Shown: positions 26,426 to 64,000 of the stretch, piece by piece | How positions within the stretch are numbered: the stretch's first letter is position 1 | How the letters are laid out: each line of letters opens with the position of its first letter | IMG/VR virus record: IMGVR_UViG_3300023174_000042 | Coordinates: 62,001-126,000 of that record | Length of the DNA stretch: 64,000 nt | Strand: one strand, 5' to 3' | Notes under the pieces: generated by a model | Databases searched by the model: none | The model's input: the letters and a program-made list of their open reading frames with translations, nothing else | What the model was told of the DNA's origin: nothing | Made by a program: the position numbers and the translations under genes

Positions 26426-26614
26426 TTATATTAGTGCGATAATTTTCCCGTTCAATAGTTTGACGTTACTTTTTTCATATTCAAACTCAACAAATTTTTG
26501 ATTAATTATGTAATCTTTAATATTATCGTTAATTGGATAACAATTCAAACAATCAACCATTGGTGTTGTCGATGATTTATATTTATAATAACCAATTTCA
26601 TAACCCCATATCAT
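26426..26614 (-). CDS. Small hypothetical protein (probable true extent of track ORF 26426-26848)
   Basis: ATG at 26614 overlaps the end of the flavoprotein gene; MIWGYEIGYYKYKSSTTPMVDCLNC...; the upstream 230 nt of the track ORF overlap a clearly real gene. Confidence 0.35.
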   Translation of the reverse strand: MIWGYEIGYYKYKSSTTPMVDCLNCYPINDNIKDYIINQKFVEFEYEKSNVKLLNGKIIALI

Positions 26615-27365
26615 CAATGAATTTTTTGTGGGATTTTTTGTAAGAAGATTTACTTTCGTCATAAGCGTCGGTTGTGTATTGCCAATTCCAATATAGTTTT
26701 TTATTAGGTTTAAATCCATAAAATTTATGAACTTCCATTTGTGTTTTTGTAACATTTTCTCCATTCCAATTTTGTCCAACACAAATAAAACCAGTTTCAA
26801 CATCCTTAACGATATTTTTTTCACCATAAGTGGTGTGTCTATTTTCAATCCAATTTAGTCTTTCTATTAAATTTTGATAGAACATATTTGCCTGTCCCCA
26901 TCTTACTGAACTAAAAAATACCACAGCATCTGATTCAAATAATTCCTTACTTACCTTCCAAAGTTCATCTGTTTTATTATTCAAACTTGCCCAACACCTA
27001 TGATAACCTGATGGATTTTTTTTATCATCTTTGAGTAATGACTTTAATATACCACAACTATTTCCTTCTTTTCTTGAAACATTTCCTTCGCAAGGAAATA
27101 TTTTAAGTTCTGACACGTCCATAAACACAGATTTTTTTCCAAGTTCTTCATTCAAATACATTCCAAGAATCTTAGATTTAGGAACGTCTACATTTTTTGG
27201 ATCCCAATTAAATCTGTTTGAGCAACTTAAAAGTAAAACTTTATCTTTTTTTTGTAGAATGTCTAAAGTTTGTTTTAATTTTTTAGCACCGTCTTCTTGG
27301 ACAAGTTCTTCCAAGAGCATCATTTTTCTGATTTTTTGAATTTCTTCTGAAATTAGGTTTGACAT
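26598..27365 (-). CDS. Flavodoxin-fold NAD(P)H-dependent FMN reductase/iron-sulfur-flavoprotein-like protein with N-terminal I/L-x-E leader
   Basis: VLLLSCSNR (FMN phosphate loop), DVSELKIFPCEG, SDAVVFFSSVRWGQAN...LIERL; leader MSNLISEEIQKIRKMMLLEE. Confidence 0.7.
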   Translation of the reverse strand: MSNLISEEIQKIRKMMLLEELVQEDGAKKLKQTLDILQKKDKVLLLSCSNRFNWDPKNVDVPKSKILGMYLNEELGKKSVFMDVSELKIFPCEGNVSRKEGNSCGILKSLLKDDKKNPSGYHRCWASLNNKTDELWKVSKELFESDAVVFFSSVRWGQANMFYQNLIERLNWIENRHTTYGEKNIVKDVETGFICVGQNWNGENVTKTQMEVHKFYGFKPNKKLYWNWQYTTDAYDESKSSYKKSHKKFIDDMGL

Positions 27366-27405
27366 AAAAATAAATAGTTTGTGTGACTAAAAAAATTATA
27401 AAACG

Positions 27406-27436
27406 AAAAAACCCTCCTTTTTGGGGAGGGTTTTTT
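27406..27436. terminator. Bidirectional-type intrinsic terminator
   Basis: AAAAAACCCTCC/GGAGGGTTTTTT perfect 12-bp inverted repeat with 7-nt loop just after the 27451 stop. Confidence 0.85.
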
Positions 27437-27450
27437 ATTTATTGTCTTAA

Positions 27451-27981
27451 TTAACCTTTATAAGTGTTATCACCATAAGTGTTATCACCCATACGCATTA
27501 CTTTATCTGCTGTAAATTGTCCAAATCTTTTATCATAATCATCTCTCATTCTAGCCTGATCTGAAAAATCATGTGCAACTTCAGATTTTAACATTCTTTC
27601 AATTTTTTGAGGATTGTCTCCTTTGAATAATAAAACTTTTCTTTCTCTAAATCCTTCGTCTCTTGTCATATCAGTAGTATCTATACCCCAATATATTTCA
27701 CCTGTATTGTTGTCACGGTACTCTTTCATAGTAAAGAAGTTACCTTCTTGGTCACCACCAGTTGATTTTTTAACATTACCTGTTGGTGTCATTTTGTTTA
27801 TTAATAATCTATTAGTTACGTAATCATAAGCTTTCTTAACAATAGCTCCACCAAGAGCAAGTCCTCCTAATGTCATCAAAACACCTTCATTGAGGTTTTT
27901 GTTATTTTTTTGCTCCTCATTAATCACTCTTTTAACGATACGAACAAGATCTGATTCAGTTAATTTTATAATTCTTTTCAT
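27451..27981 (-). CDS. Putative capsid-packaged protein with propeptide and hydrophobic helix
   Basis: MKRIIKLTESDLVRIVKRVINE...LNE followed by GVLMTLGGLALGGAIVKK; own TATTTAT motif (28001-28007) and own terminator. Confidence 0.6.
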   Translation of the reverse strand: MKRIIKLTESDLVRIVKRVINEEQKNNKNLNEGVLMTLGGLALGGAIVKKAYDYVTNRLLINKMTPTGNVKKSTGGDQEGNFFTMKEYRDNNTGEIYWGIDTTDMTRDEGFRERKVLLFKGDNPQKIERMLKSEVAHDFSDQARMRDDYDKRFGQFTADKVMRMGDNTYGDNTYKG

Positions 27982-28014
27982 AACTTTTTTTAATTTACTA
28001 ATAAATATATCAAT

Positions 28015-28046
28015 AAAAAAAAAATCACTAATTTCTTAGTGATTTT
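28015..28046 (-). terminator. Intrinsic terminator ending the replication/nrdJ transcript
   Basis: AAAATCACTAA/TTAGTGATTTT stem with TTTC loop plus an A-run giving a U-tract on minus. Confidence 0.75.
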
Positions 28047-28254
28047 CTACAATTTTATTTCCTTTAACATATTTTGGTTCGTATGGACAATTTAAACATT
28101 TTGATCCACAACAAAAACCCCTTTTTATATGATAAGATTTGGTCATAACAATTTTCCCGTTTTCATTTTCGTAAAAATCAGGTTCAGGAGATTTTTTTAG
28201 TGTCTCCTGAACATATAATTGTTGTATCCAATCGTTTGATGCTTTTATTGTCAT
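28036..28254 (-). CDS. DUF5522-like small Cys-rich metal-binding protein
   Basis: DFYENENGKIVMTKSYHIKRGFCCGSKCLNCPYEP matches the recalled DUF5522 pattern HxxRGxCCxxxCxxCPY. Confidence 0.7.
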   Translation of the reverse strand: MTIKASNDWIQQLYVQETLKKSPEPDFYENENGKIVMTKSYHIKRGFCCGSKCLNCPYEPKYVKGNKIVENH

Positions 28255-28259
28255 TTGTA

Positions 28260-29039
28260 TTAAGTATTTTCTTTTTTATTTTCAACAACTAATTTAAATG
28301 TAAACATATAATAATTCTTACCTTTTTTAACACATTTATAAGGTTCACCGTTTTTAGCTTTAACTCTAACAGTATGTGCTGGAATCCCTAAATGTTTATT
28401 AACCTCAACAGCACTTTCGTATCTACCATATTCAACACCATTATTATCGTAAACAATAATATAACCTAACCATCTTCCGTTTTTATTCCCACTTTTTACT
28501 TCAGACCACAATTTCCTTTTTTCTGGATCTTCTAAACTTTTTTTTACACCCATAGATAATTTATCTTTGTGTTCTTTTGTATTTACAACTTTCTTTAAAC
28601 CATTTAAAACTTTTACCCTATAATCTTTGTTTTCCCATTTTTTTCTTGTTAAATCACTCATTTTTTTTCTATAATCATCTGTTAAATTTTTTTTTGCCGT
28701 TTCAGATAATTTTTTACGAGTAATTTCTTTTAGTTCATCACATTTGTTTGTGAATGTGTCTCCACCAGTACCACCGATAGTGTAATTATATCCATTTAAA
28801 ACTGTATCATATTGTTCTATATATTGAACTTCTAAATCGTTTATTTTATCTGAAGTTGTTTGATTGAGAATTATAAACTCAAAATTATCCCATCCATAGT
28901 GTAGAATTGCATCATAAAGTTTGTGTCTTTTTTTTCCAACCAACATTTTATGTTCGGTTAATCTTTTATTTGGTCTTTTTGTTTTTCCAATGTATAGTTT
29001 ACCATTAATTTTATTTTTTATACAATATATATATTCCAT
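28260..29039 (-). mobile_element. Free-standing GIY-YIG homing endonuclease (Seg-like)
   Basis: YIYCIKNKINGKLYIGKT...RLTEH...YGWDNF...LE...GYN-x3-GG, then basic NUMOD-like repeats and a C-terminal HTH-like segment; start placed at ATG 29039 behind GGAGG (track uses ATG 29051). Confidence 0.9.
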
Positions 29040-29041
29040 AG

Positions 29042-29076
29042 AACCTCCCATTTATTTAATAAATATCTGGGAGGTT
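29042..29076 (-). promoter_or_regulatory. RBS-sequestering hairpin with a late promoter in its loop
   Basis: AACCTCCCA (29076-29068) pairs with TGGGAGGTT (29050-29042); loop contains TATTTAT (29065-29059). Confidence 0.8.
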
Positions 29077-29099
29077 GTGAAATTAAGTAAAAATCATTT

Positions 29100-30965
29100 T
29101 TAAAATTCTGAAACAGTACAAGCTCCACCAGCACAAGCCGCTTCACCACTAAGATTTGTATTGTCTTGTAATTCAATTACTTTTGTTAGATCAACATTAT
29201 TTAATGTTTTTAACAAGTTTTCGAATTGTTCTTTGGTGCAATCTTCAAAAGGTGCTTGTGTGTAAGTTCCTCCGTTATAAGGTAATACCGATAATCCATT
29301 ATAAAATTTTCTTGATTTCCACATCCATTCTCCAACTTTTTCCCACTCATCTTCTTTAATTGATACAGTTGCAGAAACGTTATGTGTGTTTTGTCCTGAT
29401 CTATGTCCAGGTTTAATCCACTCTTTAGATACTTTTTTAACTCTTTCTAACATTTGAAAAACAGATTCATATCGTAGAATCGATCCTTCTGGTGCCTTTT
29501 GAGGAATTGTAATTACTGCCGTATCATGTGGTCTGAAATATTCATCTTCAATAAGTTCGGGGTGGTTGATTGCAAGATAAGAATAAATTGCTTCATTTTT
29601 TCCAACACGAATTCTTCTTAAATAATAGTCATTGTGCCAAGCGTGAATTCCTGATGAGGTTCCTAAAACCAAAGATGAAGTTCCTGATGGTTTAACTGTG
29701 GTTGTTCTTGCCGCTTTATTAATTCCAATAATTTCAGATACTCTTTCGTTTTCATCTTTAACTGCTTGAGCCGCCGCTTCCATATCATAACCTAAAACAA
29801 CTCCCGAACCAATTCCTGTCATACCTACACCGATAAGAGCATCTTTTTCTGTTGTTCTTTTCCATACATCACGAAGATAATGAAAATCTGTATATCCTGC
29901 TTGTAATGTTCCAATGAACGCCGCTCCTTTAACTCTTTTTTCAAAATCTTCTTGTGATTTGATGTCTGACGCATTTACTTCACACAAATTACAGAATTGA
30001 TAAGGACGAAGACCGATTTCACAACAAGGATTTGTTCCCCAATCTTTATCGTTTGATAAATAAATTCCAGGTTCTCCTGCTCCTGATAATTCAATTCTTT
30101 TCCACAAGTCCATAAAATATTCTTGTGTTACTTTGTGACGAAGAAGAACCGCTGAATTATTTGCTCTTCCTCGTTGTGGATTTTGTTCCCACCAACTTCC
30201 ACTTTTACATGAAATCATATCATCATCATCGGCAGAAAATAACGAAATAAGAGCCGCTCTTCTGATACCTCCAGCCAATACTGCGTCTGCAATATGACAA
30301 ACAATATCATGAGTTTCAATTGGTGTAAGTTTTTCTCCTTCAGTTTTATTTTCAAACACTTTTGTAATATGGTGAATACAATCTTTAAGTGGTTGTGGAC
30401 CTGGAGCCTTTCCTCCTGATGTTACTAACAAAGCCCCTTTTTGTCTAATGTCTGAAAAATCAAAAATTGGTGTTGAAGATTTTAATCCAAAATAGGATTC
30501 TACTAATACTTTAATTGCGTCTGCCCATCCTTCAATAGAATCACCAATCAAATATCTTCTTGTTCTACTTGGGTTAGGTTTTTTTATTTCAGGTAATTTA
30601 TCAACATGATGTTTTTGAACTGAAAATCCTACTCCGGTTCCTCCTAAAAGTAAAAACATTGTTTCTGAAAAAGCATCCGGATGGTCAATTGGTAAATAGG
30701 CGCAATTATAAACCCTATTTGGCGAAATTTCAATTGGTTTTCCTCCAAATTGTAAAGATCTCATAGAAGGAAGAATTTTTTTGTCATATACCATTTTATA
30801 AACTTCCTCAATTTCTTCTTTAATTTGTGGATATTTTTTTTGATGCATTTCTTTGTTTCTTGTAACCAACTCTTCCCACGTTTCTCTTCTGTTTAAGTCA
30901 GGAACAAATTTTGCGTATTTCATATACACCGTAATGTCGCTCAATATTCTTTGTGAAATGTCCAT
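29100..30965 (-). CDS. nrdJ: Class II (adenosylcobalamin-dependent) ribonucleotide reductase, monomeric RTPR type
   Basis: LPSMRSLQFGG, YNCA, GGIRRAALISL, TNPCCEI (NxCxE), TTVKPSGT, C-terminal CAGGAC redox pair; no ATP cone. Confidence 0.92.
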   Translation of the reverse strand: MDISQRILSDITVYMKYAKFVPDLNRRETWEELVTRNKEMHQKKYPQIKEEIEEVYKMVYDKKILPSMRSLQFGGKPIEISPNRVYNCAYLPIDHPDAFSETMFLLLGGTGVGFSVQKHHVDKLPEIKKPNPSRTRRYLIGDSIEGWADAIKVLVESYFGLKSSTPIFDFSDIRQKGALLVTSGGKAPGPQPLKDCIHHITKVFENKTEGEKLTPIETHDIVCHIADAVLAGGIRRAALISLFSADDDDMISCKSGSWWEQNPQRGRANNSAVLLRHKVTQEYFMDLWKRIELSGAGEPGIYLSNDKDWGTNPCCEIGLRPYQFCNLCEVNASDIKSQEDFEKRVKGAAFIGTLQAGYTDFHYLRDVWKRTTEKDALIGVGMTGIGSGVVLGYDMEAAAQAVKDENERVSEIIGINKAARTTTVKPSGTSSLVLGTSSGIHAWHNDYYLRRIRVGKNEAIYSYLAINHPELIEDEYFRPHDTAVITIPQKAPEGSILRYESVFQMLERVKKVSKEWIKPGHRSGQNTHNVSATVSIKEDEWEKVGEWMWKSRKFYNGLSVLPYNGGTYTQAPFEDCTKEQFENLLKTLNNVDLTKVIELQDNTNLSGEAACAGGACTVSEF

Positions 30966-30994
30966 TTTTTTTACTTTAATTATTATTTATTTAT

Positions 30995-32374: not shown

Positions 32375-32404
32375 GTTTTTCTTTTTTCGTATTGATAAAT
32401 ACTA

Positions 32405-32854: not shown

Positions 32855-32870
32855 TTGTTTTTTTTTGTTT

Positions 32871-33878: not shown

Positions 33879-33899
33879 TTTTTTATTTATTAAAAATTA

Positions 33900-36180: not shown

Positions 36181-36858
36181 TTAAGAATTATATCTGTTTA
36201 ATAAAATGTCGTCTTCATCTTCCATTGGTTCATTAAATGATTTTTCAATTTCGGATGGACTAAAATTTTCAACTTCGTCTTGTGTTAAAACGTATTCATT
36301 TTTTCCAGTTTTTTCCATTTCAGATTCTTTGTCTTTGAAAAAGTCTGCCAAGTTTTGCTTGAATGGTCCTGAATCTAAACTTCTTAACTGAAGTTTTTCT
36401 TGTGCTGTTTTTGGTCTATATTTTTCATACTTGGCATCCAAAGCATCAATTTTTTGAACCAAACTATCCATTTCGGACAATTTTTCTTCCATTTTTTTAA
36501 TTTGACCAAAAAGATTTTCAAAGTATTCTTCTTGTTTGTCTGCCATTGTTTTTTGTGAATCAACTAAGTCTGTAATATCTAATTCTTCAGTTTCTTCTTC
36601 ACCTTCTTTTCCAACTTCTTCAACGTCAGGATCTTTTTCAACATCAACAGGTTGTCCTTCGGGGGCTGCCGGTGGTGTTGGGGCTGCTCCTGCCGCGGGT
36701 GCCGGGGCCGCTCCTGCATCAGGTGCGGGAGCCGCAGCGGGACCACCAGGAGGTGGTGGAATGTCACCAGGTGCTGGTGGAGCGTCTTGTTCTAAAATAT
36801 AGTTATTGATCGATCTATATCTTCTAATTTCTTCTAATATTTTTTCATCTAATTTCAT
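36181..36858 (-). CDS. Pro/Ala-rich, acidic, coiled-coil protein (prohead core/scaffold-like)
   Basis: MKLDEKILEE...YILEQ leader, PAPA low-complexity tract, E/D-rich block, coiled coil. Confidence 0.55.
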   Translation of the reverse strand: MKLDEKILEEIRRYRSINNYILEQDAPPAPGDIPPPPGGPAAAPAPDAGAAPAPAAGAAPTPPAAPEGQPVDVEKDPDVEEVGKEGEEETEELDITDLVDSQKTMADKQEEYFENLFGQIKKMEEKLSEMDSLVQKIDALDAKYEKYRPKTAQEKLQLRSLDSGPFKQNLADFFKDKESEMEKTGKNEYVLTQDEVENFSPSEIEKSFNEPMEDEDDILLNRYNS

Positions 36859-36859
36859 A

Positions 36860-37084
36860 TTATCCGTTTAATAATGTTTTTATACCATTTTTGGTTTCCA
36901 CTTGAATTTTTTTAAAAGAATTTTTTGTGTTATCAACTCTTTCAATTAACCCATCTTTCATTCTTATTGTATAGCAATCTCCAGTGTCCAAGTCACAAAC
37001 TTCTTTATAGCCATCACCTTGATCTTTTTCTGAAACTCTTGTGTTTTTTCCCAAGTAGTTATCTAATATAAGTTTAGTATTCAT
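36860..37084 (-). CDS. Small hypothetical late protein (74 aa)
   Basis: TATTTAT at 37099-37105 upstream; VCDLDTGDCY Cys pair. Confidence 0.65.
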   Translation of the reverse strand: MNTKLILDNYLGKNTRVSEKDQGDGYKEVCDLDTGDCYTIRMKDGLIERVDNTKNSFKKIQVETKNGIKTLLNG

Positions 37085-37120
37085 ATTTAATTTTTATTAT
37101 AAATATCTGTATTATTTTAT

Positions 37121-40100
37121 TTAGGACCACAATGATGTAAAAATTTGATAAGCCCTCTTGAATTCTGTATTTAATGCTCCAATTTGTTCTGGATCTTGTG
37201 TAATTTTTGTGTAAACATCATCATTTTGATTAATAGGATAATGTAATACATATTGTTTCGCCAAATTTGCAGGAACATCCTCTTCGGTTGGGAATTGGTT
37301 TGAATCTTGAATTAAAAATGTTGGGACATTTCCAACCTTTATTAAAACAAAATTTATAAAATCTTTTAAAGATCTAAAAGCGACAATTGGTAGATTTTTA
37401 TCTGTTCCTCTTGAAACGCAAAAATACTTTCTGTTTATGTATTCAAAAAACGAATCTCCGTAAACTTCCTTTAGGTTTATTGTGCTGTAATTATTTTCAT
37501 AAGCACTTATTTCTGTTCCGTTATTATTTCCTGAATCAACAAAAACAAATGTAAAAACAGATGCGGCAGTTTGGTAAGTGGTATTTGCCGTCATATCATA
37601 TTTTAATTCAATTAAATTATTTCTTAATTCAGTTAAGAATGTTTTTACTGAAACAGTTGTTGATTGTGGAGTATCTACTCCTGTAAAATTATTATATCTA
37701 GTGTTCAATTGATTTGCACAATCTTGATTTTTAGTTAAAGTGTCTTGGGATTGTAAGTTTGCTATTGTATTTTGTGCCTGAAACAATATATTAGCAGAAT
37801 CTTCTTTTTGTTTTGATTCATTTTCTTGAATTTTGCTTTGTAATTGTGAAAGAATTTTAACATTTAACGTTTGTAAAAAGTTATCTACCGTTGGCAGACT
37901 ATAAAAAGGTTGTCGTATTCCTTCAAAAACAGTGCTAAAACCATTTTCATTAACGTCATGACTTACTTTTGTAATCATGTATGGTCCAGAAAACATTGGT
38001 ATATTTCTAATATTAAAATACATCATCGGTTGTATTAAAGCACATCCCATCATATCTACAGAACAACTATAACTTCTGTTTTTATATAAATTGTATAATG
38101 AAACGCTCTGAGTTGATGATCGTCTATTTTTTTCAACATTCGCCATTTGATCCAAAATCTGTAAAGATTCGCTTGTTGGTTTACCTGGATCTTGTGAAAC
38201 ACTAAATGATTTAAATATTTGTTGGTTTTCTTTTGTTGGGTCAACATTAAACCCAACAACTTTATTTGATTTATCCCAATCTATTTTTTTTGCTTGGTTT
38301 TCTGTTAAAGGGTTATCACTTGCTCTTCTTAAATCAAAGGCATCATCTCTGAATCTATAGTCTATATTGTTGTTCAAGTTCAAATGTTCACTAGGTTTAC
38401 TTACATAGTAGCACAAAAATTTTGGGGAACTCTGTCTATAATCAACATTTAAAAAAGTCCCAAACAACATATTACCAAATTCCATAGTGCCGTCAGGTCG
38501 TGGTGTTGGGTTTTTTTGTGCGTCTTGGACGTTATAGAAATTGACATACGACGGAAGCATAAAATGTTGAAAATTGTTTTCAATTAAGATTGTTGTGACC
38601 ATATCTAAAAGAGTGTTCTTATACGAACTACTACCATTATTTTTTTCTGTTGATCCGTCTTCCAACAATTTGATAACTCCGTAAATATCAACTAAAACTT
38701 TATCGCCAACATTTCTACTTGCCCTATCAACTAACATGACATCTTCAAATAAAGTTTTGTTTTGAAAATCAAATCCTGCTATCCATGTATCGTTTAAGGC
38801 TTTAAATGTGTTCCATAATTCTGTTCTTGTTTGTTCTGTAAATCCTGCCTCTAAATTGGCTCTATTTGACGACCCATCTTCACTTATAAAAATATTTGGT
38901 AATTCTTTTCTAACCATAGGCAACATGGTGTTCAACACGTTATCAACATATTTATTTGAATCGTCAATATAGGTGTCCATTAGTTGATAAAAACTTTTTA
39001 AGTTTAAATTTTTGTTAGCTAATTTTTGAGTGGCATAAATTTTTATAAGGGGGGCAAAATCCTGAACGTTCTTTTCGTTAAAAGCAACGTTAAGGTCAAT
39101 AAAAAAATCTGTTATATATGAACCATTATTTTTATAAACAAGTTCTGGTATGGATGAATTACCAACATAATATTCTAAAGCATCCCATGTTTTGGGATTT
39201 TGTTGTTTGGATTGTGATAAACTTACTTCAGGTGGTAAATTTCCTTGTTGATATGGGCTATATATTATTGGGTTTTCAATATACCTTGTAGAAAAAGTAT
39301 AAAACAATCTTCTATCAAAATTTGATGGGTTTCCGATCTTGAAACAAACATCATAATTTATAAATCCGCCCAAAATTTGTTGGAAAGTGTCATTCTGATT
39401 CGAAATTATATTTTCAAGTTTTGTTTCTGGCGAATCTCCTGTTGGTTTATTTATCACAAGTAATTGTCTCATCAAGTAATGAAAATTTTTATATCCTTTT
39501 TCAGTGTTTGAGTCTGTGGTAACTAATCCTTGGTTTTCCGTTGGTTTTTCTTCTTTACTACTTGAATTTGGTAAAGTGTCGACATAATCATATAATGACC
39601 GACTAAAATTTAAAAATTCTGATTCAAAATTATCTAAAACTGAAATGTCAAAAGTTGTAAATAGTTCTTCTATACTTGTGTATTCAGTGTCATCACCTGT
39701 TATTAAAAAGTTTTGTTGATCTTTTTGTTCGTTTAATATCTTTTTAAGATATGTTTCTGGATTATTTTTTTTCAGTTTTGAATTATCAAACCAACCATAT
39801 TGCGAAACATTCCAAAATAACCTAACCGTCCCGTTAAACATTGCAGGATTATTAGAGAGTTCAACTTTCATAGTTCCATTTTTAAAAGCCTCTTCTTTAG
39901 CCTGATTGATATTAGAACCAAAAGATGGTAAAACATAATATAAATCAGGTTGGGTTGATGAACTAACAATTACTGACCAAGGACTAACTCTCATAGATCT
40001 AGTATTATTATTTGGGTCAAATCCTGGTAATTCAAAAATGGTTGAGTTAGTTGTGTTTAATAAAACTAATTTTTCATTGTTTATTAAGTTTTGTATTTGT

Positions 40101-44170: not shown

Positions 44171-44483
44171 AATAGAAGAAATAGTTTTCGTAAGAGTTTT
44201 TATAATCTTGTAATGAAGCTACTAAAGGAAATGGAATTGTCAATACCGCACCATCAGGTATTGCATATTCGTTTCCTGAATATTGCGGATTTGCCGCTTG
44301 GATCAACCATCCAAAATACGGAGATCCATAAAATTGTTGTGAAATTTTGTCCAACCTAGACTGACCAATAATATATATATAATTTTTGTCTGAAGTCTTT
44401 GAAGGCAACTGAACATACGGAACAACAGTTTGTTGTCCATTAATTAAAAAATCTGTATATCTATTCCAATATTGTAATCCCAT
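44160..44483 (-). CDS. LysM/gp53-like baseplate wedge protein
   Basis: SRLDKISQQFYGSPYFGWLIQAANP...IPDGAVLTIP. Confidence 0.8.
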   Translation of the reverse strand: MGLQYWNRYTDFLINGQQTVVPYVQLPSKTSDKNYIYIIGQSRLDKISQQFYGSPYFGWLIQAANPQYSGNEYAIPDGAVLTIPFPLVASLQDYKNSYENYFFYYGR

Positions 44484-51664: not shown

Positions 51665-52412
51665 AAAACTCCACCCCAAAAGTAATGTCGACCATTACTC
51701 TTTCTCCTGACGGGGCTATTACTTCTTTTGATAGATCTAATCTTGGTTCATTTTCTGTTAAAAACTTTCTTATGTATTTGGAATCTGCAATTGGCATTTT
51801 TTCTATAAACATAGCAATATTTCCTTTGTCTGTATCTCCATCAATCTCAACAATTTGTTTTAGTAGTCTTGTTGTTATAGTTGGAATCGTTCTTCCAGCA
51901 GGATATAATTTTAAGGTATTTTCGATTTCAAATTTTTCTCCCATGTTTAAAATTTTCAGTTTTACATGATTTTTTGACACAGGAAGTATAGTCTCGAATA
52001 AACCTTCTTCGTTTGGTTGGAAATTGACTTTTTTATAGTTAAGTTCTTCTAAACTAATGGTAGTTTGAAATCTTTTGTCTGTTTCAGGGTCTACCGCTGT
52101 AATCGTGTATTCGGGGCCAAATGATGTATTTCGTAAAAATAAAAGAATTGCTTCAACATCCCCGTCTATTAATTCATCAGGTCTTAAATCTTTTTCATAG
52201 ATTTTATTTCTTAATAACGGAAATATAATGCTTTCAGTTATACTTTTTTTATAATCTGCCTCAGCAATTATGTTTTCATCAAAAGCGGTTAAATAACCAA
52301 CTTTTACTGATTTCTTTTTTGATTTATAAAATTTACCTTGACTTGGTAATTGTATTACATCGTGTGGTAAATTAAATTCGGCTTGACCGGCTTGATAAAC
52401 ATCTTGTTCCAT
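51642..52412 (-). CDS. T4 gp26-like baseplate hub/tail assembly chaperone (TAC-N)
   Basis: LPSQGKFY...VGYLTAFDENII...DVEAILLFLRNTSFG; ends ...GVEFFRPFLSI; lies between tube and tape measure genes. Confidence 0.8.
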   Translation of the reverse strand: MEQDVYQAGQAEFNLPHDVIQLPSQGKFYKSKKKSVKVGYLTAFDENIIAEADYKKSITESIIFPLLRNKIYEKDLRPDELIDGDVEAILLFLRNTSFGPEYTITAVDPETDKRFQTTISLEELNYKKVNFQPNEEGLFETILPVSKNHVKLKILNMGEKFEIENTLKLYPAGRTIPTITTRLLKQIVEIDGDTDKGNIAMFIEKMPIADSKYIRKFLTENEPRLDLSKEVIAPSGERVMVDITFGVEFFRPFLSI

Positions 52413-52478
52413 ACTTTATTTATTTTAATTAAAAAATACATAAAAATTGTAGTTAGTAAATATTTTTATATCTAAATG

Positions 52479-52522
52479 AAAAAATCCACACATTTGAGTA
52501 TAAACTCTAAACATGTGGATTT
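52479..52522 (-). terminator. Intrinsic terminator after the tail tube gene
   Basis: AAATCCACA/TGTGGATTT outer stem, inner GAGT/ACTC stem, U-tract on minus. Confidence 0.7.
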
Positions 52523-52543
52523 AAATACTAAAAAAATATGTGA

Positions 52544-53032
52544 TTAATAAACTAATATACAACGGTCCATTCTCATCTGACAAGATATTTTTGCAACACC
52601 ATCTGATGAATATGTTAATGATCCCCCATCATACCCCAAAAGAAAAGTCCCTTCTAAAATCCATTTCTCGACAACAACACCAGTAGGGTCTAACATTTCA
52701 AGATCGACGTTTTTCTTATATCCCGCAGCATAACCCATACGACCTGTTACTGACTCAGCACATAATCTAATCCATTCCATAACCGCTTGTGATGCCGAAG
52801 GACCAATCGGGTCACGAAACGTTACGGGAAGTTCACCCCAATTGAATCTTCCTGCAACGAAAGTTGATGTATTTAAAAACTGAATCTCTGTAGATGCAAT
52901 TGTAAGTTTTGGTCTAGACGTTGTCTCAACATACCACTCATTTATTCCAAGTGACGATGGGAAACGTAGTATCCATCGGTTCTCCCTTTTCGGTTCGTAA
53001 GGGATAGGCATTTTCATTAATAAATCAGCCAT
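52544..53032 (-). CDS. Tail tube protein, T4 gp19-like
   Basis: EPKRENRWILRF, RPKLT, FVAGRFNWGELPVTFRD, YKKNVDLEMLDPTG...WILEG. Confidence 0.9.
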   Translation of the reverse strand: MADLLMKMPIPYEPKRENRWILRFPSSLGINEWYVETTSRPKLTIASTEIQFLNTSTFVAGRFNWGELPVTFRDPIGPSASQAVMEWIRLCAESVTGRMGYAAGYKKNVDLEMLDPTGVVVEKWILEGTFLLGYDGGSLTYSSDGVAKISCQMRMDRCILVY

Positions 53033-53138
53033 GTTAGTTTTTTGTTTTTTTTTGTTTTATTTTATTATAAATACTATCTTATGAAAAAATTTTTCTATTT
53101 ACTTTTATTTTTTTTAAAATAATCTATAACTAGATTTA

Positions 53139-53969
53139 TTATTCATATTTAGTTTTACCTTCTTTACCAGTATGATAAATTTTTAATTTGTCTTCGTCAT
53201 TAAAATATTTTCTCATTGTTTGAACATTTTTTAGATCATCATCTGAAAAACCAATATAAGGTAAAAAATAATTACTTATTTTATTTTTCATAAATGCCTT
53301 CTCTTGAAGTTGTCTTGACAGTTTTTGAACGTAAGTCATAAACTCTGTCATTGCTTCCACTTTTAGTTTTTCAGGGTTTGCTGCCGACCCCTGACCAAAA
53401 GTAACCGGATAAAATTTACACATGTCTAAATAATATCTGATTATTTCATCATCTGTTAAGATATCTTCATCGGCTAACTCTCTATATTTCTTTAGATTTC
53501 TAACAATAGTTTTTTCGTTCAATCCGTGTTTATTTTTCTTAATTAAATTATATACCGCATTTTTTAACACACTTGGGGTATGTCCTCGTGCCGTAATGAT
53601 TGAAAAAATTGATCCTTGATTAACGGCTTCCACAAAATCGTCCCATGAAGGTCCTGTTTCTGATGACATTGCGTCTTTAACAAATTCTTTATCACCTGGA
53701 ACCTTAAAATCTCTAAACGCTTCGTCGTCAAAACCAACAATCTTGTGTCCTTTGTAATTAAAAGGTTCTTTACCAATTTCAGTTCTGTATTCAGCAAAAT
53801 CTTCAGTTGACATACCAACACTTTTTCCTTTATCGTCTTTCAAATAAATTTTGGTCGGCATATACATTAAGTTATCATCCCAATCAAAAGCATAATACTT
53901 CATTGTTGGTTTTAACTGATCACTAATAATTTCTGTAATTATATCTTTTACAAAAGTTTTGTAATTCAT
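53139..53969 (-). CDS. HAD-superfamily phosphatase-like protein with N-terminal ITE leader
   Basis: Motif I FDWDDN, motif II ITARG, conserved Lys (EKLKV), motif IV GFSDDD. Confidence 0.75.
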   Translation of the reverse strand: MNYKTFVKDIITEIISDQLKPTMKYYAFDWDDNLMYMPTKIYLKDDKGKSVGMSTEDFAEYRTEIGKEPFNYKGHKIVGFDDEAFRDFKVPGDKEFVKDAMSSETGPSWDDFVEAVNQGSIFSIITARGHTPSVLKNAVYNLIKKNKHGLNEKTIVRNLKKYRELADEDILTDDEIIRYYLDMCKFYPVTFGQGSAANPEKLKVEAMTEFMTYVQKLSRQLQEKAFMKNKISNYFLPYIGFSDDDLKNVQTMRKYFNDEDKLKIYHTGKEGKTKYE

Positions 53970-53989
53970 AACAATAAATATCTTAAATT

Positions 53990-54018
53990 AAAAAAAGGGG
54001 GAACTAATGTCCCCCCTT
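53990..54018 (-). terminator. Intrinsic terminator after the tail sheath gene
   Basis: Minus strand AAGGGGGGAC-ATTA-GTTCCCCCTT followed by a T run. Confidence 0.85.
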
Positions 54019-57510: not shown

Positions 57511-57675
57511 ATGGATAAAGACGTAAAGACGATAAAAAATTTAAAAATAGACGCTAAGGTCCATGATATCCTAAAAAAATATTGTGACAAACGGGGTATT
57601 AAAATGTATAAGTTTTTAGAAAATCTTATTGTGGAAAAGTGTAAAGAAAAAAAAGATATATACGGAGAAATTTAA
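57511..57675 (+). CDS. Small ribbon-helix-helix-like transcriptional regulator
   Basis: MDKDVKTIKNLKIDAKVHDILKKYCDKRGIKMYKFLENLI: beta strand plus two helices; divergent from the sheath gene; second ATG preferred over track start 57481. Confidence 0.6.
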   Translation: MDKDVKTIKNLKIDAKVHDILKKYCDKRGIKMYKFLENLIVEKCKEKKDIYGEI

Positions 57676-58712: not shown

Positions 58713-58729
58713 TATTTTATTTTAATATT

Positions 58730-59242
58730 TTATAATCCTCTAAATTCATTTGGACCAACAGGTGCCGCAATAATAGTGCGATAGAATGGTTTATAGCCTT
58801 TATATGTGTGTTTTATGTCTGAAATAACACGTCCATCATTTACTACGGTGTAATATCTAACAAAGTTTTCACTATCATAGTATCCTACATAATCCCCAAA
58901 ATCTATATCGATATTAAGGTCAGTTAATGTCTTCAAATAAACAGACATAGTAATGTTTCCTGGCTCTACTTGATCCAATTTTGTGGTTCCAAGTAATTTA
59001 TTTTCGGGGGACGCTATACCAACGTAAGCATTAAACTCAACTGGAGGTAAAAACTTAATACCATCTTCAACAACTTCACCGTAAACATCATCAGTCTTAA
59101 TCTTATTTCTATCAATCTTGTATAATATACAAGTGTAGTTCATATCACCAATTAACCATTCTTGACCCATTTCAATTTCCAACTCAAAATCACGGTCACC
59201 AAAAAATTTACCAAGTCTTGTAATAGGGACATTATTTCGCAT
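58730..59242 (-). CDS. Neck/head-completion protein, gp14-like
   Basis: ILYKID...DDVYGE...F.PPVEFNAYV, DIDFGD; position upstream of the gp15-like gene. Confidence 0.55.
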   Translation of the reverse strand: MRNNVPITRLGKFFGDRDFELEIEMGQEWLIGDMNYTCILYKIDRNKIKTDDVYGEVVEDGIKFLPPVEFNAYVGIASPENKLLGTTKLDQVEPGNITMSVYLKTLTDLNIDIDFGDYVGYYDSENFVRYYTVVNDGRVISDIKHTYKGYKPFYRTIIAAPVGPNEFRGL

Positions 59243-59256
59243 AAAAAAGGTTTTTC

Positions 59257-59285
59257 TTGATAAATATACAATTATTGATTATCTT
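59257..59285 (+). promoter_or_regulatory. Sigma70-like promoter overlapping a divergent late promoter
   Basis: TTGATA (59257-59262)-17 nt-TATCTT (59280-59285) on plus; TATTTAT on minus at 59266-59260. Confidence 0.5.
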
Positions 59286-59301
59286 TTTTAAAAGACTAAC
59301 T

Positions 59302-61062: not shown

Positions 61063-61083
61063 TATTTATTTAATAAAAAAATT

Positions 61084-61791
61084 ATGCCAACTAAATTAGA
61101 TCAAAATCAAATATCAGGATTGAATGAAGAACTAAGTTCATTAGATTCAATAGACGCGTCTTTAGAAAAAAAAATTTCAGTAGAAGACTCTATCAATGAT
61201 GCGGTTGATGTGACATTAACAAATACAATATCTTTAAAACAAGACAAATTAGTTAGTGGGACAAATATAAAAACAATCAACGGAAATTCTTTACTTGGGA
61301 GTGGAAATTTGTCTGTTACAGCAACATCACCTATAACTCAAATTGGATATGGAACAGGAACTTCTGTTTCTAACACCACAACTGTTACTATATCAGCATC
61401 TTTATTAATACCCGCAGGAACTTTATCCACAGATCAAGTTTTAATGATTAGAGCAAAATCCATTAAGACCGCAGGAACAGGAACAAGTTGTGCTCGAATT
61501 CATATTAACACATCAAATAGTTTGGTTGGAGCAACTCAAATTGCTATTGCCGCAGCTCAATCGGGGGGGTCAACTTATATACAATCTTTTTGGAGAGACA
61601 TTTATTTTGACGGAACTTATTTACAATGTTATAACCCTTCAAACGCAATATCATCAGACATTACGTCAGGAAACATACAGCCAATTTCATTTAATAAAAA
61701 CGTAGATAATTATCTTATTTTTAGTGTAGGACATGCCGCTACAACAGATTCAATGAGCATAAAAAAATATAGCGTATTCAAATATGATTAA
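61084..61791 (+). CDS. Short fibre-like structural protein
   Basis: N-terminal coiled coil, KQDKLVSGTNIKTINGNSLLGSGNL fibre-type motif, beta-rich C-domain; TATTTAT at 61063-61069. Confidence 0.55.
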   Translation: MPTKLDQNQISGLNEELSSLDSIDASLEKKISVEDSINDAVDVTLTNTISLKQDKLVSGTNIKTINGNSLLGSGNLSVTATSPITQIGYGTGTSVSNTTTVTISASLLIPAGTLSTDQVLMIRAKSIKTAGTGTSCARIHINTSNSLVGATQIAIAAAQSGGSTYIQSFWRDIYFDGTYLQCYNPSNAISSDITSGNIQPISFNKNVDNYLIFSVGHAATTDSMSIKKYSVFKYD

Positions 61792-61984
61792 TTTAACAAA
61801 AACACAAAATGGATTTACTGTAAATGGTGTTGATTACATACTAAGTGGTGAGTCAGAAGTTTTTAATGAACAACAAGCAAATTTCCCAACAAATAAAGGT
61901 GTGTTATTTCTTGACACATCAGTATCAATAGACAACAGAAAATTTGACAACATTCAAAGTTTTATTGAAGAGTTATACAAATGA
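61784..61984 (+). CDS. Small hypothetical protein (possible fibre partner/chaperone)
   Basis: 66 aa, overlaps the stop of the preceding fibre-like gene. Confidence 0.6.
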   Translation: MINLTKTQNGFTVNGVDYILSGESEVFNEQQANFPTNKGVLFLDTSVSIDNRKFDNIQSFIEELYK

Positions 61985-62006
61985 TAAATTATAAATATTT
62001 ATCATT

Positions 62007-64000
62007 ATGAAAGTATCATTTCAATACGAAAATAAAGACTTTAAGAAATATTCAAATTTTGTTAACAGGTTTATAAAACTCCTACAAAAAGAATTTCCTT
62101 TAAAAAACGATGTAAAAATCTTTTTTTTAAATGACAAAAAGGGGGAAATGTCCACTGGAAGTAGAATGCCAAATAACATAATTAAGGTTTTGGTCGCCAA
62201 CAGATTAAATCGCGACATTATGAGAACTTTGGCTCACGAATGGGTTCATGAATATCAAATGGATGTTCAGAAAAGAAAACAAGGTCCTAATATTGGTGGT
62301 AAAAACGAAGATGAAGCAAATGCGTTTGCTGGTAGACTTATTAAAATGTTTGAAAAAGACAACCCTAACTTAGAGGAAATGATGTATGAACAAAAAGGTA
62401 TCAGAGGTAAAATTAGTTTAATTAACGAAGAAATAATAACTGAAGAGAAAAAAACGATAAAAGAAAACTTTTTGGTTGAGATGAAAAAAATTGGAATTGA
62501 AAAATTACCATATTCATACTCTTCCTTGTCAAGATTTATTGATTCTAAAACAATGAACGTCCATTACAATAAACATTACAAAGGATATGTTGACAAATTA
62601 AATAAAGCCATAAAAAAAATTGATGGAGATATGGATTTAGAAGAAATTATTAGATCCATATCAAAATTTGACAAAAATATTAGAAATAACGCAGGAGGTT
62701 CTTTTAATCACGCTTTATTTTGGAAAATGTTGTCACCAAAAAAACAATTACCAAAAGGGGAAATTCTTAAAAAGATAAACAAAGACTTTGGAAACATAAA
62801 AAAAATGAAAGACGAGTTTAATCAAGCGGCAAAAGATCGTTTTGGATCAGGTTGGGCTTGGTTATACCTTAGCAAAGACGGAAAATTGAAAATAATGTCC
62901 ACCCCAAATCAGGATAATCCACTTATGAATGTTGTTAAAAAAGGTGGATTTCCATTATTGGGTTTAGATGTTTGGGAACATGCTTATTATTTGAAATATC
63001 AAAACAAACGAGATGAATATATCAATAACTTTTGGAATGTTGTAAATTGGGAGTTTGTAAATGATTTATATTTGTCAAAAACAAAAAAAGAAAACATTAA
63101 AGAAAATGTTGAGTCTAAAGAAATTATAAATGAGATCAGCTCAACATTTGCATTTCCATACACAGCAAAACAATTAAGAGAATTAATTCATTCGCAGTAT
63201 GTAGGATGCCATGGTCAACAATATAAAAATGGATGTATAGGAAAGATCCAAACAAAAAAATGTAAAACAGATATTGGTGTTTTAGGCGGTGATTATGCAG
63301 AAAAAAAACACGGAGGAACAAGTCAATGGTCTGTAATCAATCGTTTTGACACCAATGGCAAAGTCAAAAAAGAGATTTACAATATTTGGCAAGAAGAAAC
63401 AGAAGGAGTAACAGATTTTAAAACATGGATTAAAGAACATGCATACGATCTTTTTTCAAATGAAGGAATGTATTTAGATAGATTGGCCGAAATAAACGTT
63501 GGGACTATAGAAATTGGTAAAGAAAATGAGGGATACGCAACAAGTATCATCAAACAAATATATAAATTAAATCCTGATGAAGAAGGTATAACTTACGAAA
63601 TATATGAACATTGTTCGGGAGATGTTAATGATAGAAAAAAAGGTCAAGATATAGTTTTAAAAATTAAAGGTCACGACACAATTTATTTTCAAGTCAAACC
63701 ATTTTTAAATCAAAATAACGATATTCAATATTTTGATGGTGGAGATAGAGGACATTATTTCAAAGTAAATTCTTGGAACACAAACAAAAAATATAAAGAA
63801 GAAAATGTTGATGTAATAGTGTATGTTGATAGATCTGAACAAAAATATATTATGTTTAGAAACGATCATAGTAAAATTTTAACAATAGGAACCTCAAGAA
63901 AAAACATACCATATTTTATATATTATTATGAAATGCCGCTCAAAAGTAATTTCCAAGTTCCATTACAAAAAGAAACATCAAGTGCTCCCGTAAAACAATT
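62007..64000 (+). CDS. sodA: Three-domain fusion (3' truncated): IrrE/ImmA-like HExxH metallopeptidase + Mn-type superoxide dismutase + PD-(D/E)xK nuclease-like domain
   Basis: Hand-translated ORF open from ATG 62007 to the window end (664 codons; absent from the track because it has no stop). LAHEWVHE...EDEANAFA; LPYSY...HYNKH..GYV, GGSFNHALFW, FGSGWAWL, NQDNP, DVWEHAYY; GKENE...DRKKGQD-x13-QVK. The symbol applies to the SOD domain only. Confidence 0.88.
   Translation, partial: MKVSFQYENKDFKKYSNFVNRFIKLLQKEFPLKNDVKIFFLNDKKGEMSTGSRMPNNIIKVLVANRLNRDIMRTLAHEWVHEYQMDVQKRKQGPNIGGKNEDEANAFAGRLIKMFEKDNPNLEEMMYEQKGIRGKISLINEEIITEEKKTIKENFLVEMKKIGIEKLPYSYSSLSRFIDSKTMNVHYNKHYKGYVDKLNKAIKKIDGDMDLEEIIRSISKFDKNIRNNAGGSFNHALFWKMLSPKKQLPKGEILKKINKDFGNIKKMKDEFNQAAKDRFGSGWAWLYLSKDGKLKIMSTPNQDNPLMNVVKKGGFPLLGLDVWEHAYYLKYQNKRDEYINNFWNVVNWEFVNDLYLSKTKKENIKENVESKEIINEISSTFAFPYTAKQLRELIHSQYVGCHGQQYKNGCIGKIQTKKCKTDIGVLGGDYAEKKHGGTSQWSVINRFDTNGKVKKEIYNIWQEETEGVTDFKTWIKEHAYDLFSNEGMYLDRLAEINVGTIEIGKENEGYATSIIKQIYKLNPDEEGITYEIYEHCSGDVNDRKKGQDIVLKIKGHDTIYFQVKPFLNQNNDIQYFDGGDRGHYFKVNSWNTNKKYKEENVDVIVYVDRSEQKYIMFRNDHSKILTIGTSRKNIPYFIYYYEMPLKSNFQVPLQKETSSAPVKQ

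What the first reader, a model, noticed from the sequence alone, without database searches (positions are those of the whole stretch)
26598..63130. Shared I/L-x-E leader marks a set of unrelated late proteins as capsid-targeted cargo
Seen: unrelated folds begin with similar amphipathic, Glu-terminated leaders. Flavoprotein MSNLISE-EIQKIRKMMLLE; 27451-27981 MKRIIKLTE-SDLVRIVKRVINE...LNE; 36181-36858 MKLDEKILE-EIRRYRSINNYILE; HAD protein MNYKTFVKDIITE; plus the internal linkers of the SOD polyprotein. All lie downstream of TATTTAT motifs, and replication enzymes in the window lack such leaders. Known: T4 internal proteins carry an N-terminal capsid-targeting sequence removed by gp21 at I/L-x-E. 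Inference: a general address tag loads a redox/phosphatase/membrane/nuclease toolkit into the head.
Basis: partly seen in the sequence, partly recalled or inferred. Interest (0 to 1): 0.78.

Follow-up and report, generated by a model that had tools for sequence, protein, structure and literature searches.

The report
Shared N-terminal tag on phage proteins
About one in seven proteins of this uncultured 273-kb freshwater jumbo phage, and thousands of otherwise unrelated proteins in its relatives, start with the same short Glu-terminated helix. It most likely works like the phage T4 capsid-targeting sequence that loads cargo into the head, but no experiment has tested this.

Summary
The window is part of a 272,576-bp T4-related jumbo myovirus from lake metagenomes. 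Four related leader types sit at the exact N-terminus of 46 of 316 called proteins:
- A: MKRIIRLTESDLxRIVKRVInE
- B: MKIIITEDQ
- C: MxxLIRxILKEE
- D: MNxLxEEIxRIKxLMxLLxE

There were no hits on the reversed proteome. Once the leader is removed, the 46 bodies fall into 44 unrelated groups.

The HAD-like protein and the SOD linkers share only a short I/L-x-E motif.

Leader A matches 8,230 protein clusters in metagenomes. Its DNA pattern occurs once in 596 Gb of prokaryote genomes, and the leader was not found in 50,697 GenBank phages. Synonymous codons vary while the peptide stays fixed. Conservation stops exactly at the Glu.

The phage encodes a T4 gp21-type protease. Its capsid protein has a predicted ...FLINE|A maturation site, matching the leader's ...VINE| end. 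Leader genes share the TATTTAT upstream motif with virion genes.

Best reading: a T4-CTS-like targeting propeptide, inferred and not shown (about 0.55). It is a new variant of a known kind at unprecedented scale.

The parts
26598..27365 (-). 255-aa flavodoxin-like protein (WrbA/azoreductase-like) with a type D leader; the leader is encoded at about 27306-27365
   Evidence: HMM D gives i-E 2e-6 at residues 1-20. There are 3003 homologs, which JGI names 'multimeric flavodoxin WrbA'. The leader is conserved, with E19 invariant. In the AF2 model the leader is a low-confidence detached helix (residues 3-16) ahead of an alpha/beta body. The top Foldseek hits are FMN azoreductases (E 5e-4, TM about 0.4).
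27451..27981 (-). 176-aa protein of unknown function with a type A leader, MKRIIKLTESDLVRIVKRVINE, encoded at 27916-27981
   Evidence: HMM A gives i-E 2e-15. There is no Pfam or PHROG family. The first 40 residues find more than 140 metagenomic proteins with the same leader on unrelated bodies.
36181..36858 (-). 225-aa protein with a type D leader (about 36787-36858), a Pro/Ala-rich linker and an acidic helical C-terminal part
   Evidence: HMM D gives i-E 1e-5. The G001 ortholog is 56% identical and keeps the leader. There is no Pfam or PHROG family.
27370..27376 (-). TATTTAT upstream motif, 4 nt before the ATG of the flavodoxin-like gene
28001..28007 (-). TATTTAT upstream motif, 19 nt before the ATG of the 176-aa leader gene
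37099..37105 (-). TATTTAT motif before the 74-aa gene (36860-37084); the 225-aa leader gene follows 1 nt downstream and is presumed to be co-transcribed
53139..53969 (-). 276-aa HAD-like protein starting MNYKTFVKDIITE. It is not a member of the leader families; it has only an I-x-E at residues 11-13, which the G001 ortholog keeps as I-V-E
   Evidence: No leader HMM hit. No Pfam or PHROG family. Atlas neighbours are viral DUF2608/HAD-like clusters, which is a lead only.
62007..64000 (+). 714-aa fusion protein that runs on to 64151, past the window end. It consists of an HExxH unit (residues 1-128), the linker SLINEEIITEE...FLVE, an Fe/Mn SOD (165-353), the linker EIINE and a C-terminal unit
   Evidence: Pfam Sod_Fe_C 1e-41 and Sod_Fe_N 2e-21. 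In G001 the HExxH unit and the SOD are separate genes. The stand-alone SOD has its own N-terminal extension, MKSLKLLSE...FLTE|MK. TATTTAT lies at 61996-62002.

Best explanation
The leaders are most likely capsid-targeting propeptides of the T4 CTS kind, greatly expanded in this phage clade.

Proposed mechanism:
- Each tagged protein is made from a TATTTAT-type promoter together with the virion proteins.
- Its N-terminal amphipathic helix docks it onto the scaffolding core of the assembling prohead.
- The gp21-type prohead protease then cuts after the conserved Glu of an I/L-x-E site. Candidate sites are L-T-E at 7-9 and/or I-x-E at 20-22 in type A, and the terminal L/I-x-E in types B-D.
- This frees the body inside the head, to be ejected with the DNA.
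- Tandem leader-body-leader-body ORFs would be cut into separate units in the same way.

Shown:
- The tag exists and sits at the exact N-terminus.
- It is modular and under protein-level selection.
- It is restricted to viruses and to this clade.
- The protease, and a matching capsid-protein site, are present.

Inferred:
- Docking to the core, cleavage, packaging, ejection and late timing.
For: 1. Forty-six of 316 proteins carry a leader, 45 at residue 1, with 0 hits on the reversed proteome. The bodies are unrelated: 44 BLAST components.
2. 97.8% of leader proteins have I/L-x-E in their first 28 residues, against 34% of the others.
3. In 195 unique type A leaders the information content is mostly at least 3 bits per position from M1 to E22 (about 1.5 at the two variable positions 13 and 21). 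It drops to 1.3 at position 23 and below 0.7 beyond. L7 (100%) and E22 (98%) are conserved although they lay outside the DNA search pattern.
4. The phage encodes a T4 gp21-type protease: phrog_207 at 1e-42 and PDB 5JBL at 2e-14, with SELNHP and GISSRG motifs. The head module is T4-like in gene order.
5. The capsid protein's N-terminal 60 residues are nearly identical (2 substitutions) between G000 and G001 and diverge right after ...LINE. This site aligns to T4 gp23 ...FLTE|A and is the same I-N-E that ends leader A.
6. Among genes with at least 20 nt of upstream gap, 24 of 25 leader genes have TATTTAT, against 66 of 140 others (p=1.5e-6). No leader gene has only the host-type TAnnTTTG motif. 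TATTTAT precedes the sheath, tube, baseplate, portal, protease, scaffold-position and terminase genes.
7. The tag is modular. It is gained or lost on orthologous bodies, and it lies inside ORFs at fusion junctions. Leader genes lie directly beside the capsid gene in both genomes.
8. Synonymous codons vary freely across 107 unique leader DNAs, so selection acts on the peptide.
9. There is a published precedent: T-even internal proteins are diverse bodies that share only a CTS, which is removed at L/I-x-E (PMC3012670, PMC9026906).
Against: - There is no direct evidence of cleavage or of presence in virions. No cultured relative exists and no RNA run holds the phage.
- The complex prediction with protease, scaffold-position protein and capsid N-terminus gave no answer.
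- I/L-x-E is not depleted in the bodies of tagged proteins (O/E 1.06 against 1.17).
- TATTTAT also precedes the helicase and about 60 other non-leader genes, so 'late' is an inference. In several genes it ends only 4 nt before the ATG.
- The residue after E22 is usually Q, E, N or S, not the Ala seen at the capsid-protein site.
- The most conserved part of type A lies after the first L-T-E site and is kept in internal copies. It may therefore stay on the mature protein and do something else.
- The scaffold-position protein is not detected by the leader HMMs.
- Forty-six cargo species per head is far more than T4's four to eight.
Confidence: 0.55

Rival explanations
1. The leader is a retained functional helix rather than a removed address tag. 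It would be a common docking, oligomerisation, membrane-binding or DNA-binding amphipathic helix that brings many accessory proteins to one hub in the infected cell, such as the inner membrane, a replication or assembly factory, or a shared partner protein. It would have no role in the capsid.
For: - The core SDLxRIVKRVIxE is a basic amphipathic helix with hydrophobic residues spaced as in a heptad.
- It lies after the first L-T-E site and is kept in internal copies of tandem proteins.
- AF2 models the type D leader as a free helix.
- I/L-x-E is not depleted in the bodies.
- Bodies with LysM, PG-binding or lysozyme domains would act at the cell envelope.
Against: - It does not explain why conservation stops exactly at a Glu in every leader type.
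- It does not explain why L7-T8-E9 and E22 are nearly invariant.
- It does not explain why the end copies the capsid protein's predicted I-N-E maturation site.
- It does not explain why the genes share the virion-gene upstream motif.
- The leader has no hydrophobic stretch of signal-peptide or transmembrane type.
Confidence: 0.25
2. The leader is a by-product of a mobile expression cassette. The cassette would consist of a terminator hairpin, the TATTTAT promoter and the first 20 or so codons. It would be copied by recombination in front of new genes, so the peptide is kept because it gives good expression or translation initiation, not because it addresses the protein anywhere.
For: - A 138-nt promoter-plus-leader unit is repeated five times within 4 kb, and two copies are 96% identical.
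- The upstream regions of several type A genes are near-identical.
- Tagged genes lean towards the accessory genome: 16 of 45 have a homolog in G001, against 128 of 249 others (p=0.054).
Against: - Across 107 unique leader DNAs the synonymous sites vary freely (for example R18 as AGA 46, CGA 39, CGT 15) while the amino acids stay fixed.
- Internal copies, which have no promoter or start codon, keep the peptide.
- Four leader types that differ in sequence share the same helix-plus-Glu design.
- A core gene has kept its leader across 3003 homologs.
Confidence: 0.12
3. The similarity is a chance or compositional effect of an AT-rich genome, in which N-termini are rich in Lys, Ile and Glu.
For: - The genome has 32% G+C.
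- 34% of ordinary N-termini contain I/L-x-E. This is all that the HAD-like protein and the SOD linkers share with the leader family.
Against: - There were no HMM hits on the reversed proteome.
- Scores separate sharply: members have i-E<0.01 and nearly all others have i-E>0.3.
- Leader A matches 8,230 representative proteins at E<=1e-3 in a library of 1.84 billion.
- Its DNA pattern occurs once in 596 Gb of prokaryote genomes.
Confidence: 0.02

Closest known systems
Capsid-targeting sequence (CTS) of phage T4 internal proteins IPI/IPII/IPIII and Alt, and the gp24 propeptide (Mullaney & Black 1996; reviewed in PMC9026906 and PMC3012670)
   Same: - Both are short propeptide-like leaders at the exact N-terminus that end in I/L-x-E.
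- Both are shared by otherwise unrelated bodies that turn over quickly.
- Both phages encode a gp21-type protease and a gp23-type capsid protein with a delta domain.
- The tag is modular.
   Different: - The tag here is 13-22 residues in four sequence types, against 10 in T4, and no sequence homology to the T4 CTS was established.
- Type A is bipartite, with two candidate cleavage sites.
- It marks about 15% of the proteome (46 proteins) rather than 4-8.
- Tandem leader-body repeats occur within single ORFs.
- The clade is an uncultured freshwater one whose early promoter motifs resemble the Bacteroidota consensus.
- Packaging and cleavage are untested.
Long N-terminal propeptides of ejection proteins in giant phages SPN3US/phiKZ/201phi2-1 (PMC5694885, PMC10052503)
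   Same: - These are also jumbo phages whose heads hold many (about 50) protein species, many of them processed by a gp21-related protease after Glu.
- Two SPN3US paralogs have identical N-termini, which the authors likened to a CTS.
   Different: - Most of those propeptides exceed 100 residues (one is about 20) and are not a common sequence across unrelated proteins.
- The phage here is not a phiKZ-like virus.
Encapsulin cargo-loading peptides
   Same: Both are short conserved peptides that address unrelated enzymes, including redox enzymes, to the interior of an HK97-fold shell.
   Different: - Encapsulin peptides are usually C-terminal, bind the shell protein directly and are not removed.
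- There is no homology.
Polymorphic toxin/effector systems (conserved N-terminal trafficking region with variable C-terminal domains)
   Same: - One conserved N-terminal module sits on a very large, recombining repertoire of unrelated C-terminal bodies.
- Repeated cassettes favour swapping of bodies.
   Different: - Those systems are bacterial and use secretion machinery.
- Here the proposed carrier is a phage head, and the bodies are mostly small proteins of unknown function.

Membership tests
T4-type capsid-targeting sequence (CTS) propeptide system | Short leader at the exact N-terminus of the precursor | tested here: met
   Forty-five of 46 HMM hits start at residue 1-13 and the other is a miscalled start. 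In 107 unique leader A DNAs the Met lies at a fixed distance in 83%. Leader length is 13-22 aa.
T4-type capsid-targeting sequence (CTS) propeptide system | Leader ends in the gp21 cleavage motif L/I-x-E | tested here: met
   97.8% of leader proteins have the motif, against 34% of the others. E22 is 98% and L7-T8-E9 100% conserved. Conservation stops at the Glu.
T4-type capsid-targeting sequence (CTS) propeptide system | Same genome encodes a gp21-type (S77) prohead protease with catalytic His and Ser, plus a gp23-type capsid protein that has a cleavable delta domain | tested here: met
   phrog_207 at 1e-42 and phrog_138 at 3e-66. PDB 5JBL at 2e-14 with SELNHP and GISSRG motifs. The capsid site ...FLINE|A aligns to T4 ...FLTE|A and is conserved in G001.
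T4-type capsid-targeting sequence (CTS) propeptide system | One leader shared by unrelated mature proteins | tested here: met
   44 BLAST components among 46 bodies. 178 body families in 120 related loci. 8,230 representative clusters.
T4-type capsid-targeting sequence (CTS) propeptide system | Expression together with head proteins (late) | tested here: inconclusive
   Leader genes share the upstream TATTTAT motif with the virion genes (p=1.5e-6) and none has only the host-type motif. Timing was not measured, and the motif also precedes the helicase gene.
T4-type capsid-targeting sequence (CTS) propeptide system | Leader is removed by the prohead protease | not testable with these tools
   No proteome or isolate exists. 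The complex prediction gave no answer.
T4-type capsid-targeting sequence (CTS) propeptide system | Leader is sufficient to bring a protein into the prohead core, and the cargo is present in virions | not testable with these tools
   No cultured relative was found among 50,697 GenBank phages.
T4-type capsid-targeting sequence (CTS) propeptide system | Sequence homology to the T4 CTS itself | not tested
   No tool comparison with the T4 CTS peptide was made. tblastn searches with type A and type D leader peptides found no real match in 50,697 GenBank phages, T-even phages included. The resemblance is one of design only.
Sec/Tat/lipoprotein signal peptides | Hydrophobic h-region of about 10-15 residues after a basic n-region | tested here: not met
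   The leaders have a charged residue every 2-4 positions (alignments). Classic signal peptides occur on other proteins of this genome and look different.
phiKZ/SPN3US-type ejection-protein propeptides | Mostly long (over 100 aa) propeptides, specific to each protein | tested here: not met
   The leaders are 13-22 aa and are common to unrelated proteins. The comparison is with PMC5694885.

The most novel reading that the evidence does not exclude
An abundant, uncultured clade of freshwater jumbo phages uses one universal, protease-removable address tag to load a huge and rapidly changing arsenal of proteins into the head for injection. The arsenal would be about 46 proteins per genome and thousands of families across the clade. 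Some are encoded as leader-body-leader-body polyproteins, and they include a complete sigma factor, a flavodoxin-like reductase, an SOD, peptidoglycan-binding proteins and peptidoglycan hydrolases. The 22-residue tag would then be a sequence-only way to read out the injected effector repertoire of phages that cannot be grown.
Probability: 0.4. Interest if true: 0.85.

Novelty: new variant of a known kind. Interest (0 to 1): 0.78.

Why it matters
If the tag is a capsid address, it turns an idea known from four T4 proteins into a general, sequence-readable marker of injected proteins. It would pick out thousands of candidate host-takeover and anti-defence effectors in phages that have never been cultured.

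It would also give a second, longer and highly conserved targeting peptide for packaging foreign proteins into phage heads. Heads carrying dozens of different cargo proteins, partly made as polyproteins, would change how much 'protein genome' a phage is thought to deliver at infection.

If the tag is not a capsid address, then an unexplained sorting or docking signal marks 15% of a phage proteome and more than 8,000 protein clusters. That would be equally worth solving.

Tried and rejected
- Chance or composition is rejected for types A-D: there were 0 hits on reversed proteomes and the score gap is sharp.
- A paralog family that simply has a conserved N-terminus is rejected: the bodies form 44 of 46 separate BLAST components.
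- Conservation at the DNA level only is rejected, because synonymous sites vary.
- A bacterial origin or bacterial signal is rejected.
- Iterating the HMMs did not widen the family.
- The scaffold-position protein and other head-module proteins looked leader-like by eye, but the HMMs do not detect them. I therefore do not claim that they carry the tag.
- Depletion of I/L-x-E in cargo bodies was tested as a signature of protease exposure, and no clear depletion was found.
- A complex prediction of the leader with the protease, the scaffold-position protein and the capsid N-terminus gave no answer and counts neither way.
- Searches for the leader in GenBank phages and in the three nearest named relatives found nothing beyond chance. 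Those relatives are Flavobacterium phage immuto, LR756508 and Microcystis phage Mel-JY01.
- Literature searches for the peptide strings found no paper.
- No RNA run holds the phage.

Full report
**What the window is.** The window is bases 62001-126000 of a single 272,576-bp viral contig. It is an IMG/VR record with an estimated completeness of 93% and 32% G+C. The contig is a myovirus distantly related to T4.
- The tail sheath, baseplate wedge and hub proteins match T4-type families; the tail-tube and tail-fibre-region calls rest on position and size only.
- Outside the window lies a head module in T4 order: portal, small proteins, gp21-type protease, a hyper-acidic 507-aa protein in the scaffold position, then a gp23-type capsid protein and the large terminase.
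- The nearest GenBank phages are only about 41-44% identical in the capsid protein: an uncultured 484-kb phage, Microcystis phage Mel-JY01 and Flavobacterium phage immuto.
- The same sequence occurs in 20 freshwater and lake metagenome runs from 11 studies, and in no RNA run.

**Checking the observation.** I called 316 genes on the whole genome and listed all N-termini.
- Dozens of proteins begin with one of four related leaders:
  - A: MKRI(I/V)RLTESDLxRIVKRVInE
  - B: MKIIITE(D/S)Q
  - C: M(K/N)xLIRxILKEE
  - D: MNxLxEEIxRIKxLMxLLxE
- Profile HMMs built from seed alignments hit 46 proteins at i-E<0.01. Forty-five hits are at the very N-terminus and the other is a miscalled start. The reversed proteome gave none.
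- The score gap to the next-best proteins is wide.
- With the leader cut off, the 46 bodies form 44 separate BLAST components.
- Of the 20 larger proteins scanned with Pfam, 19 of them leader-bearing, almost none has a family: one has a lysozyme domain and one a weak DHH hit.
- The HAD-like protein (53139-53969) and the SOD-protein linkers match no leader model. They share only I/L-x-E, which 34% of ordinary N-termini also contain.

**Spread beyond this genome.** Searching 5.8 billion proteins with residues 1-40 of the 176-aa protein returned over 140 proteins that carry an almost identical MKK(V/I)(I/V)KLTESDLVRIVKRVINE. Their bodies are unrelated and include LysM, PG_binding_1 and sigma-70 region 4 domains.
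- A degenerate DNA pattern for TESDLxRIVKRVI found one match in 596 Gb of prokaryote genomes, on a 3.3-kb MAG contig.
- The contigs that carry it are fragments of roughly 240-320-kb phages of the same clade, with proteases 76-79% identical.
- The 120 loci hold 276 leader-bearing ORFs, 247 unique bodies and 178 body families. Only about 8 of 150 representatives have a Pfam domain. Those include a complete sigma factor, an HD domain, a lysozyme, LysM and PG-binding domains.
- A 30-column profile of leader A matched 8,230 representative proteins (clusters at 50% identity) at E<=0.001 among 1.84 billion.
- Neither type A nor type D was found in 50,697 GenBank phages. None of the four types was found in the three nearest named relatives.
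- No paper contains the peptide strings.

**The tag is a peptide-level, modular unit.**
- Among 107 unique leader A DNAs the synonymous positions vary freely while the amino acids are fixed. L7 (100%) and E22 (98%) were outside the search pattern.
- In 195 unique leaders the information content is mostly at least 3 bits per position from M1 to E22 (about 1.5 at the two variable positions), 1.3 at position 23 and below 0.7 beyond.
- I compared G000 with a complete relative, G001 (293,850 bp, fetched, with 26 strict leader proteins). Leaders are conserved on orthologs, for example the flavodoxin-like protein at 76% and the 225-aa protein at 56%.
- Leaders are also present on one ortholog and absent or shortened on the other, as in g251189/h221223 and g237417/h15309. 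One lies internally at a fusion junction (h287171).
- Many top database hits carry two or three leader copies, in the arrangement leader-body-leader-body.
- A 138-nt promoter-plus-leader unit is repeated five times within 4 kb. This offers a route by which new bodies acquire the tag.
- Tagged bodies have G001 homologs somewhat less often than other proteins (16 of 45 against 128 of 249, p=0.054).

**Link to the head.**
- The protease matches T4 gp21 (PDB 5JBL, E 2e-14) and has the SELNHP and GISSRG motifs.
- The capsid protein aligns to T4 gp23 so that its ...QASFLINE(60)|ASSDG corresponds to T4 ...GSFLTE(65)|AEIGG.
- The first 60 residues are nearly identical (2 substitutions) between G000 and G001 and diverge right after LINE. 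Leader A ends with the same V-I-N-E.
- Several tagged genes lie directly beside the capsid gene in both genomes.
- T4 biology supplies the precedent. CTS propeptides of 10-20 residues are removed at L/I-x-E, they are sufficient to package foreign proteins, and they sit on a diverse set of internal proteins (PMC9026906, PMC3012670, PMC5694885).

**Upstream motifs.** Two classes are visible.
- TAnnTTTG resembles, from my own recollection and not a tool test, the Bacteroidota housekeeping-promoter consensus. It precedes about 25 genes, presumably early ones.
- TATTTAT lies 4-30 nt before about 100 start codons. These include the sheath, tube, baseplate, portal, protease, scaffold-position and terminase genes.
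- Among genes with their own upstream gap, 24 of 25 leader genes have TATTTAT against 66 of 140 others (p=1.5e-6). No leader gene has only the host-type motif.
- Timing is inferred, not measured. TATTTAT also precedes the helicase gene.

- The 255-aa protein is a core gene of the clade, with 3003 homologs that JGI names 'multimeric flavodoxin WrbA'. Its AF2 model has a flavodoxin-like body and a detached, low-confidence leader helix. Foldseek finds FMN azoreductases weakly.
- The 714-aa ORF has a firm Fe/Mn SOD domain. In G001 it is three separate genes, and the stand-alone SOD has its own N-terminal extension ending FLTE|MK. This supports the polyprotein idea.
- 'HAD' is only a lead.
- No nuclease was identified.

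**Weighing the explanations.**
- The CTS-like reading explains several features together: the position of the tag, the Glu boundary, the match to the capsid-protein site, the shared upstream motif, the modularity, the internal copies and the restriction to viruses.
- Against it stand the complete lack of direct evidence, the absence of motif depletion in the bodies, the uninformative complex prediction and the non-Ala residue after E22.
- The best-conserved helix also lies after the first candidate site and could remain on the mature protein.
- I put the CTS-like explanation at about 0.55, a retained docking, membrane or hub helix at about 0.25, an expression-cassette by-product at about 0.12, and chance at about 0.02 for the true family.

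**Verdict.** It is a new variant of a known kind at a scale not described before. Interest is 0.78.

Noticed in passing
whole genome; examples at G000 49740-50276, 51915-53990 and 199433-199855 (outside the window): About 25 genes are preceded by TAnnTTTG, often as TATATTTGTAGAAA with an upstream TTG. This resembles, from my recollection, the Bacteroidota housekeeping-promoter consensus. It points to a Bacteroidota host and to an early gene class. None of these genes lies in the window.
   Followed up: partly
window 61996-64000 (the ORF runs to 64151): A 714-aa ORF fuses an HExxH unit, an Fe/Mn superoxide dismutase and a 340-aa unknown unit. In the relative G001 the first two are separate genes, and the HExxH gene sits next to the head module.
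   Followed up: yes
L011:6385-10406 (G000 234385-238406): A 138-nt unit, consisting of a terminator-like G/C hairpin, TATTTAT and the leader A codons, is repeated five times in front of different bodies. Two copies are 96% identical. This looks like a cassette that spreads the tag.
   Followed up: partly
P0241, P0245, P0249, P0262, P0275 (metagenomic proteins): Single ORFs carry two or three copies of the leader, N-terminal and internal, between unrelated bodies. One internal copy still has its Met and Lys-Lys, as expected after loss of a stop codon between two tagged genes.
   Followed up: partly
G000 182170-183693 (L008:7173-8693, minus strand): The 507-aa protein in the gp22 (scaffold) position is extremely acidic, with runs such as DDMMEMDDMEEMDD. 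Only its first ~48 residues were seen to be conserved with G001, and its overall identity to the G001 protein is 44%.
   Followed up: partly
G000 180236-182143 (capsid protein): The gp23-type capsid protein has 635 aa. It aligns to T4 gp23 at residues 73-107 and 316-609, so about 200 residues in between appear to be an insertion rich in Gly, Pro, Asn and Cys.
   Followed up: no
window 28260-29051 (minus strand): A 263-aa ORF begins ...YIYCIKNKINGKLYIGKT..., which looks like a GIY-YIG homing endonuclease. It sits between the RNR gene and the tagged genes. This is by eye only.
   Followed up: no
window 18417-23975, 37121-44170 and 44486-49585 (minus strand): Three giant ORFs of 1852, 2349 and 1699 aa lie in the tail and baseplate region. 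The 1116-aa sheath protein carries a Pro/Thr-rich linker (PTPTPQATASPTPTPS). None was studied further.
   Followed up: no
G000 42652-44316 and 236152-236610: Two proteins have a leader-like motif at the C-terminus instead of the N-terminus: VEKLNEEFDRINSLMSYNRK at residues 536-551 (i-E 0.007) and SLIKRIVRETLRE at 138-146. T4 Alt and gp21 are processed at the C-terminus, so these may be worth a look.
   Followed up: no
window 24000-30000: Near-identical sequence is present in 20 freshwater, lake and pond metagenome runs from 11 studies (2018-2025), so this is a widespread and recurrent phage. Two metatranscriptome runs from one of the samples hold none of it.
   Followed up: partly
window 27370-27376, 53974-53980 and 61996-62002: In several genes TATTTAT ends only 4 nt before the ATG. 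If the motif is a -10-like promoter element, these mRNAs would be leaderless or nearly so. Otherwise the motif has another role in initiation.
   Followed up: no
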